A stretch of DNA of 64,000 nt from Glycera tridactyla (lineage: Eukaryota). This document shows, in pieces, positions 451 to 60,862 of the stretch. Made by a program: the position numbers and the translations under genes. The stretch spans positions 46,996,001 through 47,060,000 of the forward strand of contig OZ286471.1 of the NCBI GenBank assembly GCA_965644265.1. The letters are read 5' to 3'. The notes under the pieces were generated by a model, which saw nothing but the letters and a program-made list of their open reading frames with translations, ran no database searches and was not told where the DNA came from. The stretch's first letter is position 1. Every line of letters begins with the position of its first letter.

Positions 451-693
451 ATCTTGTGTGCGTCTCATCTACAACAACAGAGGCACCAGCTTCGACGTTG
501 CCAGCCTTTCTCAATGTTCCAGCTGGTTGCTTCGTTAGAACAACTGGTGGTAATGCGAATGGCGATTATTGTCACTTTCCCTTCGTCTACAAATCGGAAC
601 GCTATGATACATGTATCAAGCTAAATCACGATCGGTATTGGTGCTCGGTTGCATCAATATATGCTGTGGGCCAACGATGGGGAAATTGCCTAG
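451..693 (+). CDS. Exon FN2-1 (type A; linker + FN2)
   Basis: ttttcattag|AT..CTAG|gtaacg, 243 nt, phase 1-1; DLVC..GCFVRTTGGNANGDYCHFPFVY..YWC..RWGNCLG. Confidence 0.95.

Positions 694-60862: not shown

What the first reader, a model, noticed from the sequence alone, without database searches (positions are those of the whole stretch)
451..60862. Giant FN2 x26 + PAN/Apple x17 'beads-on-a-mucin-string' protein
Seen: 47 in-frame exons encode ~4,080 aa with 26 FN2 and 17 Apple-type domains separated mostly by Thr/Ser/Pro linkers, and neither terminus is in the window. Established: vertebrate FN2 proteins carry few copies (fibronectin 2, MMP-2/9 3, mannose receptor family 1, seminal BSP proteins 2). 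FN2 binds gelatin/collagen or phosphorylcholine through an aromatic pocket, and the FPF, WC and YDxDxxW residues are kept in most copies here. PAN/Apple domains bind glycans or proteins (factor XI, prekallikrein, HGF, apicomplexan microneme adhesins). Inference: a highly multivalent extracellular adhesive, mucus, matrix or recognition protein. I do not recognise this architecture from any named family.
Basis: partly seen in the sequence, partly recalled or inferred. Interest (0 to 1): 0.85.

Follow-up and report, generated by a model that had tools for sequence, protein, structure and literature searches.

The report
Giant FN2-then-PAN mucin-like gene segment
This 60-kb stretch is an inner part of one very large animal gene whose exons string 26 collagen-binding-type (FN2) beads and then 17 PAN/Apple beads on sugar-bearing spacers; it is spliced in RNA, has only small unnamed relatives, and its function is untested.

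Summary
On the + strand, 46 AG/GT-bounded exons (451-60862) join into 12,204 nt (4,067 codons) without a stop. They hold 26 FN2 domains (Pfam PF00040, 26/26), two linker-only exons, and 17 PAN/Apple domains (PF00024, 17/17), one of them split by the only phase-2 intron. A 27th FN2 survives as a half-exon remnant. All five N gaps lie in introns. Because flanking exons are phase 1-1, the frame does not depend on the gaps, though whole exons could be hidden in them.

Contigs of three runs (one study, probably RNA) cover only the exons, apart from repeat-like spots and one contig reaching 51 nt into an intron, and show GT..AG joints at my predicted boundaries. Paralogous FN2 cores have dN/dS of about 0.15-0.36, while introns no longer align.

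The named-family comparison needs correcting. Predicted proteins with up to 17-18 FN2 exist in sardine and amphioxus. Small unnamed signal-peptide proteins with FN2 x5-6 followed by PAN x4-6 occur in marine metatranscriptomes. I found no named or characterised FN2+PAN family.

The scan found this same gene before: notes on the five windows upstream report 43-81 FN2 each (unverified here). This window adds the FN2-to-PAN switch.

Most likely it is a secreted, O-glycosylated, multivalent matrix or mucus cross-linker. Ligands and tissue are unknown.

The parts
451..693 (+). FN2 exon 1 (linker + FN2). Its first four residues (D-L-V-C) supply the sixth Cys of an FN2 that lies upstream of the window.
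   Evidence: AG/GT, phase 1-1; Pfam fn2 E 5.4e-13
1067..1330 (+). FN2 exon 2
3079..3144 (+). linker-only exon (22 codons, D-L-V-C + Thr/Ser-rich)
   Evidence: phase 1-1 AG/GT candidate with polypyrimidine tract; paralogue of 6418-6474
3768..3938 (+). FN2 exon 3 (no linker)
4257..4499 (+). FN2 exon 4 (paralogue of exon 1, 63% aa identity)
4962..5234 (+). FN2 exon 5 (paralogue of exon 2)
6418..6474 (+). linker-only exon (19 codons)
6879..7049 (+). FN2 exon 6 (paralogue of exon 3)
7512..7754 (+). FN2 exon 7
8232..8501 (+). FN2 exon 8
9216..9461 (+). FN2 exon 9
10230..10538 (+). FN2 exon 10
10975..11304 (+). FN2 exon 11 (starts 63 nt after gap 10726-10911)
11819..12052 (+). FN2 exon 12
12693..12956 (+). 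FN2 exon 13
13851..14123 (+). FN2 exon 14
14710..14976 (+). FN2 exon 15
16218..17003 (+). FN2 exon 16, the longest (262 codons): about a dozen 12-residue Ser/Thr/Pro repeats, then a poly-Ser/Thr run, then FN2
   Evidence: internal 72-nt-offset self-match
17544..17861 (+). FN2 exon 17
19006..19257 (+). FN2 exon 18
   Evidence: contigs X1 19004-19156 and X2 19060-19231
19908..20246 (+). FN2 exon 19
   Evidence: contigs X1 19906-20073 and X3 19981-20176
21018..21335 (+). FN2 exon 20
   Evidence: contigs end at 21333; joint 21333->23421 GT..AG
21823..22131 (+). FN2 exon 21
   Evidence: contig X3 21885-22131
22814..22907 (+). remnant of a 27th FN2 exon. Only the 3' half and its GT donor are left. 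There is a stop upstream and no usable acceptor, so it is not in the model.
   Evidence: HMM positions 58-88 only; translation and DNA
23423..23740 (+). FN2 exon 22
   Evidence: joint 23738->24224 GT..AG in X1
24226..24540 (+). FN2 exon 23 (83% DNA identity to exon 22; core dN/dS 0.15)
25179..25505 (+). FN2 exon 24
26915..27217 (+). FN2 exon 25
28021..28221 (+). FN2 exon 26, the last FN2, with a short 8-residue spacer before it
30965..31234 (+). PAN/Apple exon 1
   Evidence: Pfam PAN_1 E 4.9e-07; AlphaFold pLDDT 89 with PAN/apple folds as top PDB matches
32729..32992 (+). PAN exon 2 (acceptor 24 nt after gap 32236-32704)
33953..34225 (+). PAN exon 3
35940..36212 (+). PAN exon 4
37007..37288 (+). 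PAN exon 5
40120..40354 (+). PAN exon 6a. It ends in phase 2 at AACAG|GT, where a (TG)n run begins.
41036..41115 (+). PAN exon 6b: the last Cys of PAN 6 plus a Thr-rich linker
   Evidence: frame closes only with this pair
42060..42317 (+). PAN exon 7
44650..44910 (+). PAN exon 8
46039..46302 (+). PAN exon 9
46948..47211 (+). PAN exon 10
49589..49834 (+). PAN exon 11
51510..51767 (+). PAN exon 12
52628..52867 (+). PAN exon 13
54202..54444 (+). PAN exon 14
57795..58052 (+). PAN exon 15. It ends with an R-K-R-R motif.
58853..59119 (+). PAN exon 16, degenerate: four of six Cys, first and last missing
   Evidence: HMM 46.7 bits over positions 11-68; alignment
60605..60862 (+). PAN exon 17, the last seen. 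It ends in phase 1 with a GT donor, so the gene goes on.

Best explanation
Positions 451-60862 are an internal, 3'-ward part of one very large animal gene.

Shown here. 46 symmetric exons splice into an open frame of 4,067 codons. Those codons encode 26 FN2 domains on Ser/Thr/Pro-rich spacers, followed by 17 PAN/Apple domains on short Thr-rich spacers. The exons are under purifying selection and appear spliced in RNA-type contigs.

Inferred. The product is secreted. The spacers carry dense O-glycans and act as stiff bottle-brush tethers. Each FN2 bead keeps the aromatic pocket that in MMP-2/-9, fibronectin and seminal BSP proteins binds collagen/gelatin or phosphorylcholine. Each PAN bead offers a glycan- or protein-binding face. 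The many weak sites then add up to high-avidity cross-linking of an extracellular matrix, cuticle or mucus layer.

Each FN2 unit has six Cys (C1-x14-C2-x13-C3-x9/10-C4-x14-C5-x4-C6), with C6 encoded by the next exon. This pattern most likely forms a third, kringle-like disulfide that closes the bead.
For: Gene model: all 46 exons have AG/GT, 44 of 45 introns are phase 1, and 12,204 nt carry no stop.

Domain identity: Pfam fn2 26/26 and PAN_1 17/17. The FN2 profile's best solved relatives are MMP-9, MMP-2 and fibronectin. The PAN model has pLDDT 89, and every top PDB match is a PAN/apple fold: HGF N domain, SML-2 lectin, plasminogen, leech antiplatelet protein, FXI/prekallikrein.

Selection: the FN2 cores of paralogous exons have dN/dS of about 0.15-0.36, while introns no longer align.

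Expression: in three runs, contigs lie on exons and intron bins have depth 0 (apart from repeat-like spots and one contig reaching 51 nt into an intron). There are GT..AG joints at 23738->24224 and 21333->23421.

Pocket residues are kept in 22-26 of 26 copies.

Secreted nature and the single-gene reading: complete relatives P0032 and P0041 have a signal-peptide-like start, then FN2 x5-6, then Thr-rich linkers, then PAN x4-6 with the same PAN signature, and no hydrophobic tail.

Six-Cys unit in 25/26 copies.
Against: No ligand, tissue or localisation data exist.

The runs are only guessed to be RNA. They come from one study, have low depth (2-6), and are contigs, which can collapse near-identical repeats.

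The FN2-to-PAN junction (28221->30965) was not seen in RNA and spans two assembly gaps.

No signal peptide or stop lies in the window.

O-glycosylation and the third disulfide are inferred from sequence only.

FN2 domains of different proteins bind different ligands, so 'collagen' is only the commonest precedent.
Confidence: 0.6

Rival explanations
1. It is a humoral or mucosal pattern-recognition agglutinin. On this reading, the diverged FN2 beads (30-60% identity to one another) and PAN beads recognise phosphorylcholine-type or glycan epitopes on microbes and clump or trap them.
For: FN2 of seminal BSP proteins binds phosphorylcholine (PDC-109 is among the PDB matches). The nearest PAN folds include a galactose-binding lectin (SML-2). 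Atlas neighbours of the PAN model are lectin-type proteins: fibrinogen-C/PAN and C-type lectin/PAN of molluscs. Repeat diversification is compatible with varied specificities.
Against: dN/dS is well below 1 and shows no sign of diversifying selection in the FN2 cores. No immune-type effector domain is in the window. The best FN2 matches are the collagen-binding ones.
Confidence: 0.17
2. It is a reproductive coat or gamete-binding protein (egg jelly or coat, or a seminal protein), like the vertebrate FN2-only BSP and ELSPBP1 proteins.
For: Many of the multi-FN2 hits are named epididymal sperm-binding protein 1-like.
Against: Those proteins have 2-4 FN2, no PAN and no mucin spacers. The names are automatic. 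No tissue data exist.
Confidence: 0.08
3. The locus holds two genes, not one. An FN2-mucin gene would end near 28.2 kb, and a separate PAN gene would begin in or after the gaps at 30.4-30.8 kb.
For: The 2.7-kb interval between the arrays holds two gaps. Reading past the donor at 28221 meets a stop after three codons. No RNA joint across the interval was examined.
Against: PAN exon 1 has an AG acceptor in phase 1 and no start codon or signal peptide. The last FN2 exon has a normal phase-1 GT donor. No first or last exon was seen in 28222-30964. Four unnamed relatives carry FN2 and PAN in one open frame, two of them in the same order.
Confidence: 0.1
4. It is a decaying exon array, a pseudogene or an assembly artefact of collapsed or duplicated repeats.
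For: There is one broken FN2 exon remnant (22814-22907) and one degenerate PAN (58853-59119). The assembly has five gaps. Odd 'goes back' joints appear in the contigs.
Against: 4,067 codons have no stop. dN/dS is 0.15-0.36. Copies are at most 83% identical in DNA and their introns are unalignable, so they are not assembly duplicates. Spliced contigs exist.
Confidence: 0.03

Closest known systems
Unnamed FN2-PAN proteins from marine metatranscriptomes: P0032 (Logan SRR14460572, an eastern tropical North Pacific seawater metatranscriptome, PMC8830328), P0041 and P0009 (JGI), and P0052 with P0196-P0199
   Same: The same two domain types sit in one open frame. P0032 and P0041 share the same N-to-C order (FN2 block, then PAN block), Thr-rich linkers, the same PAN signature (G-C-x-D-x-F ... 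T-L-S-x-G-G ... V-D-Q-Y-R-R) and partly six-Cys FN2. PAN scores against the window's PAN profile reach 78 bits.
   Different: They are 368-1,144 aa with 4-10 FN2 and 1-6 PAN, against at least 26 + 17 here. Identity to the window protein is only about 25-31%. In P0009 and P0052 the two domain types are interleaved. Their organisms are unknown and none is characterised.
Predicted multi-FN2 proteins: Sardina pilchardus XP_062381919 (17 FN2), Branchiostoma belcheri KAI8499649 (18 FN2 + SEA), ENA contig protein P0003 (16 six-Cys FN2, intronless)
   Same: Long tandem FN2 arrays. P0003 has the six-Cys unit in 13 of 14 copies.
   Different: None has PAN domains. They have fewer copies and at most 32% identity. 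All are uncharacterised.
Gelatinases MMP-2/MMP-9 and fibronectin (collagen-binding FN2 modules)
   Same: They are the best solved-structure matches of the FN2 profile, at about 55 bits per domain. The Cys and aromatic pocket residues are conserved.
   Different: They have 2-3 FN2 embedded in a protease or in FN1/FN3 arrays, four Cys per module, no mucin spacers and no PAN.
Plasminogen/HGF family and factor XI/prekallikrein (PAN/Apple proteins)
   Same: The PAN/apple fold is the same. The six-Cys Apple pattern is present in most copies.
   Different: Those proteins have 1 or 4 PAN at the N-terminus, followed by kringles and/or a serine protease. Here the PAN domains follow the FN2 domains, there are 17 of them, and no protease or Pfam kringle was found.
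Apicomplexan microneme Apple-repeat adhesins (MIC4, SML-2)
   Same: Tandem apple domains used as multivalent glycan-binding adhesins; they are among the fold matches.
   Different: Different kingdom, 2-11 apples, no FN2 and no mucin spacers.

Membership tests
Fibronectin type II domain (Pfam PF00040) | Match above the Pfam gathering score | tested here: met
   26 of 26 exons match at E<=0.01, best 3.7e-18. The first member scores 49.2 bits against a cut-off of 22.2.
Fibronectin type II domain (Pfam PF00040) | Four conserved Cys (two disulfides) and the aromatic pocket residues | tested here: met
   The four core Cys are invariant. FPF 25/26, W-C 26/26, W-G 26/26 (25 W-G, 1 W-A), Tyr positions 22-24/26. 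Disulfide bonding itself was not tested.
PAN/Apple domain (Pfam PF00024, PAN clan) | Sequence match to PAN_1 | tested here: met
   17 of 17 at E<=0.1, best 3e-08. The first member scores 29.9 bits against a cut-off of 21.4. The weakest copy is 58853-59119.
PAN/Apple domain (Pfam PF00024, PAN clan) | PAN/apple fold (a helix packed on a curved sheet) | tested here: met
   The AlphaFold model has pLDDT 89.3. All top Foldseek PDB hits are PAN/apple domains, with probability 1.0 and TM by query 0.53-0.68.
Kringle domain (Pfam PF00051) | Kringle sequence profile, about 80 residues with three disulfides | tested here: not met
   No kringle hit at E<=0.01 in any FN2 exon. The unit is 57-61 residues long. 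Only the outer C1...C5-x4-C6 spacing resembles a kringle.
Gel-forming mucins (MUC2/MUC5 type) | VWD-C8-TIL assemblies and a C-terminal cystine knot flanking the PTS regions | tested here: not met
   Only fn2 and PAN families were found in the exons, and there are no further domain exons in the window. The termini lie outside the window. The complete relatives P0032 and P0041 show only fn2 and PAN.
Plasminogen/HGF and FXI/prekallikrein serine-protease families | N-terminal PAN/Apple followed by kringles and/or a trypsin-like protease domain | tested here: not met
   The PAN domains follow the FN2 domains, and the window has no protease or kringle. The C-terminus of the gene was not seen.
PAN-mucin-ZP apical matrix proteins (LET-653/NompA type; recalled from my own knowledge) | A ZP domain and membrane anchor after the PAN domains | tested here: inconclusive
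   No such exon lies in 60863-64000, but the 3' end of the gene is outside the window. The relatives P0032 and P0041 end without ZP or TM.
Unnamed FN2-PAN family (P0032/P0041 type) | FN2 block followed by a PAN block with the V-D-Q-Y-R-R-type PAN signature, Thr-rich linkers and a signal peptide | tested here: inconclusive
   Domain order, linkers and PAN signature are met. The signal peptide cannot be tested because the 5' end is outside the window. The PAN tree is poorly resolved.

The most novel reading that the evidence does not exclude
This window may be the tail region of a single gene of about 370 kb or more. Per the scan's unverified notes on the five windows upstream, that gene would carry roughly 300 six-cysteine FN2 beads before switching to at least 17 PAN/Apple beads. 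That would be a protein of well over 20,000 residues, among the largest in animals, and an extreme lineage-specific inflation of a small, undescribed secreted FN2-PAN family that is otherwise seen only in marine metatranscriptomes.
Probability: 0.5. Interest if true: 0.8.

Novelty: new variant of a known kind. Interest (0 to 1): 0.62.

Why it matters
FN2 and PAN/Apple are well-studied binding modules, but they are known mainly from proteins with one to four copies. I found no characterised protein that joins them.

This locus shows an animal building a huge beads-on-a-string protein from them, with the exon design (one symmetric phase-1 exon per bead) that allows unlimited tandem growth and in-frame exon skipping. 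It also links that giant gene to a small secreted FN2-PAN family found in ocean metatranscriptomes.

If the ligands are collagen and glycans, this would be a new kind of matrix or mucus cross-linker. It would also be a natural model for how avidity scales with repeat number. The six-Cys FN2 unit bears on the old question of how FN2 and kringle modules are related.

Tried and rejected
Word-indexed homologue searches with P0032 (PAN region), P0052 and P0009 were partly swamped by Thr-rich words: only the 8,000 candidates sharing most words were scored. They gave no named FN2+PAN protein.

Literature searches for FN2 with PAN/Apple, mucin, kringle or invertebrates returned nothing on this architecture. 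The tick paper hit concerned FN3 and separate Apple proteins. The sea-anemone matrisome paper mentions PAN/Apple only in Polydom. The Ozhogina 2001 FN2/kringle paper is not held.

Rfam found no RNA family in the window.

I looked for the divergent C-terminal PAN-like domain of P0032/P0041, and for any further exon, in 1-450, 28222-30964 and 60863-64000. There was none.

Self-BLASTN found no large tandem DNA units; only four exon-sized matches appeared. A recent segmental duplication or assembly duplication is therefore rejected.

The PAN domain tree is too weakly supported (1 of 29 branches starred) to date the expansion.

The window's own protein, or any relative above about 37% identity, is absent from the top 150 hits of the 1.84-billion-protein library.

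I could not name the organism. The runs are coded, and the scan notes' guess 'annelid' was not tested.

The third disulfide could not be checked on a model, because the tools return no coordinates.

Full report
**What is in the sequence**

The window is eukaryotic DNA with 42% G+C and five N runs. A motif scan of all six frames found FN2-like open frames only on the + strand (25 vs 0). PAN-like open frames follow downstream on the same strand.

Each FN2 core ends in W-G-x-C-x followed by G|GT. So each exon ends one base into a codon (phase 1) at a GT donor. Upstream, each has an AG acceptor in the same phase with a pyrimidine tract. The PAN exons follow the same rule.

HMMs built from these exons and run on all six frames found 26 full FN2, one half FN2 (22814-22906) and 17 PAN. 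None was on the minus strand. Pfam confirms fn2 in 26/26 and PAN_1 in 17/17.

**Gene model**

Two short linker-only exons (3079-3144 and 6418-6474) precede the two FN2 exons that lack a spacer. PAN 6 is split by the only phase-2 intron, 40354|41036.

With these, 46 exons (all AG...GT) give 12,204 nt, or 4,067 codons, with no stop.

The 27th FN2 is a remnant. Only its 3' half and donor remain, next to a high-copy repeat, and it has no usable acceptor.

**Assembly gaps**

All five gaps fall in introns of the model, and no exon touches an N run. Because the flanking exons are phase 1-1, the reading frame is independent of what the gaps hold. Whole exons could be hidden there, most plausibly in the 2.7-kb interval between the last FN2 and the first PAN.

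**Is it a live gene?**

- Self-BLASTN aligns only exons, at 77-83% identity for the youngest four copies. Introns have diverged beyond alignment.
- Nei-Gojobori estimates for the FN2 cores of paralogous exons give dN/dS of about 0.15-0.36, for example dN 0.042 and dS 0.274 for exons 23423 vs 24226.
- Three runs of one study from the same organism were laid on 18990-24900. They are coded, guessed to be RNA, and kept as contigs.
- Their contigs lie on the exons, and the intron bins have depth 0. The exceptions are repeat-like spots (around 22356-22553 and 24845) and one contig that reaches 51 nt into an intron. Several contigs stop at my exon ends.
- Joints with GT..AG ends connect 23738->24224 (exons 22->23) and 21333->23421 (exon 20->22, skipping exon 21 and the remnant).
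- Caveats: depth is low, contigs can collapse near-identical repeats, and the RNA label is a guess. I count this as moderate support for expression and splicing.
- The FN2-to-PAN junction was not covered.

**Anatomy of the protein**

The FN2 unit is 57-61 residues long with six Cys: C1-x14-C2-x13-C3-x9/10-C4-x14-C5-x4-C6. This holds in 25 of 26 copies. C6 (in D-x-x-C) is encoded at the start of the next exon, so exons and domains are out of register by four residues.

The first exon of the window therefore completes an FN2 that lies upstream. C2-C5 are the canonical FN2 cysteines. The extra outer pair has kringle-like spacing and most likely forms a third disulfide. This is an inference and was not tested.

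Spacers between FN2 units are 8-54 residues long, with one of 201 residues built from 12-residue repeats. They are 46% Ser+Thr and 14% Pro. That is the composition of O-glycosylated mucin-type tethers. The aromatic pocket residues are kept in 22-26 of 26 copies.

The PAN units have the six-Cys Apple pattern in most copies and short Thr-rich spacers. An AlphaFold model of PAN 1 has pLDDT 89. It matches only PAN/apple folds: HGF N domain, SML-2 galactose lectin, plasminogen, leech antiplatelet protein, FXI/prekallikrein. By sequence, HGF N is closest. The FN2 profile is closest to MMP-9, MMP-2 and fibronectin.

**Relatives**

A profile of the 26 FN2 cores was searched against 1.84 billion representative proteins. 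It gave 6,410 hits. None is more than about 37% identical to the window protein, so this gene is not in that library.

Proteins with many FN2 do exist:
- 17 FN2 in a sardine protein
- 18 FN2 plus SEA in Branchiostoma belcheri
- 16 FN2 in an intronless ORF on an ENA contig
- 9-11 FN2 in gecko, frog, a catfish MMP-9-like protein and a nemertean protein

All are uncharacterised. Twenty-six in one window exceeds them all, but the difference is one of degree.

More telling are four unnamed proteins that combine FN2 with the same PAN subtype. P0032 (975 aa) and P0041 (1,124 aa) are complete. Each has a signal-peptide-like start, then FN2 x5-6, then Thr-rich linkers, then PAN x4-6, and no hydrophobic tail. 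P0009 and P0052 interleave the two domain types. P0032 comes from a seawater metatranscriptome of the eastern tropical North Pacific (PMC8830328). P0041 comes from a JGI sample.

Further searches found no named FN2+PAN protein, and the literature searches found none either. A PAN tree groups 16 of the 17 window copies, together with P0052's single PAN (SH-aLRT 87), but it is weakly supported overall.

**What the scan noted before**

These are unverified leads and were not used as evidence. The window just upstream overlaps my first two exons and is described as holding about 46-47 more FN2 modules. Windows further upstream, back to about 309 kb, are described as the same gene with 48, 81, 66 and 43-44 FN2. 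The most distant one is said to hold the gene's start.

The six-Cys clasp was also noted there, and the animal was guessed to be an annelid. My window agrees on the six-Cys unit and on upstream continuation. What it adds is the switch from FN2 to PAN, the splice evidence from contigs, and the small FN2-PAN relatives.

**Most likely function**

The protein is most likely a secreted, heavily O-glycosylated, highly multivalent binder that cross-links an extracellular matrix, cuticle or mucus. FN2 beads would bind collagen-like or phosphorylcholine-type ligands, and PAN beads would bind glycans or proteins.

What is shown: the architecture, selection, splicing, the folds and the secreted relatives. 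What is inferred: the ligands, glycosylation, the disulfide clasp and the tissue.

Rivals are a microbe-trapping recognition protein, a gamete or egg-coat protein, two adjacent genes, and a dead array. The last is nearly excluded.

**Verdict**

I rate it a new variant of a known kind, namely a modular mucin-like adhesive built from known domains in an undescribed combination and at an extreme size.

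Noticed in passing
window 22419-22569: A high-copy repeat lies just upstream of the broken FN2 exon remnant. Summed contig depth is about 1,300-1,700 at 22356-22553 in all three runs, and many contigs with unrelated flanks share 22495-22531. It is probably a transposable-element fragment whose insertion or an associated deletion removed the exon's 5' half.
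   Followed up: partly
window 21333->23421 and 23738->23421 (joints): One contig joins exon 20 directly to exon 22, skipping exon 21. Two contigs join the end of exon 22 to a start that looks like exon 22 itself. This could be in-frame exon skipping, copy-number difference between individuals, or k-mer collapse of near-identical repeats. Contigs cannot tell these apart.
   Followed up: no
window 20967-21208: One contig (X1, no mismatches) runs 51 nt upstream of the acceptor at 21018, past an in-frame stop. This means some unspliced RNA or DNA is present in that run.
   Followed up: no
window 40350-40380 and 41030-41040: The only phase-2 intron starts exactly where a (TG)n microsatellite begins. 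Reading through the donor gives a few Cys/Val codons and then a stop. I only confirmed that the exon pair 40120-40354 + 41036-41115 closes the frame.
   Followed up: partly
window 58040-58052 / 58853: An R-K-R-R motif sits at the junction between PAN 15 and the degenerate PAN 16. It is a possible proprotein-convertase cleavage site that would release the C-terminal part.
   Followed up: no
window 16236-16700: About a dozen tandem 12-residue repeats (S-T-S-I-T-P-P-V-S-L-P-x type, 36-nt period) lie inside one exon. It is the only long internal tandem repeat of the region and a candidate length-variable mucin segment. Pfam gave it a spurious Drf_FH1 hit.
   Followed up: no
window 451-8501: The first eight FN2 exons form a repeated three-bead unit (A, B, linker exon + C; then A', B', linker' + C'; then A'', B''). 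Identity between corresponding beads is 58-67%, synonymous sites are saturated and core dN is 0.1-0.35. This is an old block duplication of three beads at a time.
   Followed up: partly
window 61840-62312: Long (GT)n/(CA)n microsatellites lie downstream of the last PAN exon. No coding exon was recognised in 60863-64000.
   Followed up: partly
L003 10001-14659 (ENA ERZ22147071, contig of 1.09 Mb): An intronless 4,659-nt ORF encodes 16 six-Cys FN2 domains (P0003) in an unnamed eukaryote-like contig. It is the closest array of the six-Cys FN2 type outside this genome. No PAN gene lies within 10 kb.
   Followed up: partly
P0005 / P0158 (Clarias gariepinus): Catfish proteins named MMP-9-like are predicted to carry 9-12 FN2 domains instead of the usual three.
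   Followed up: no
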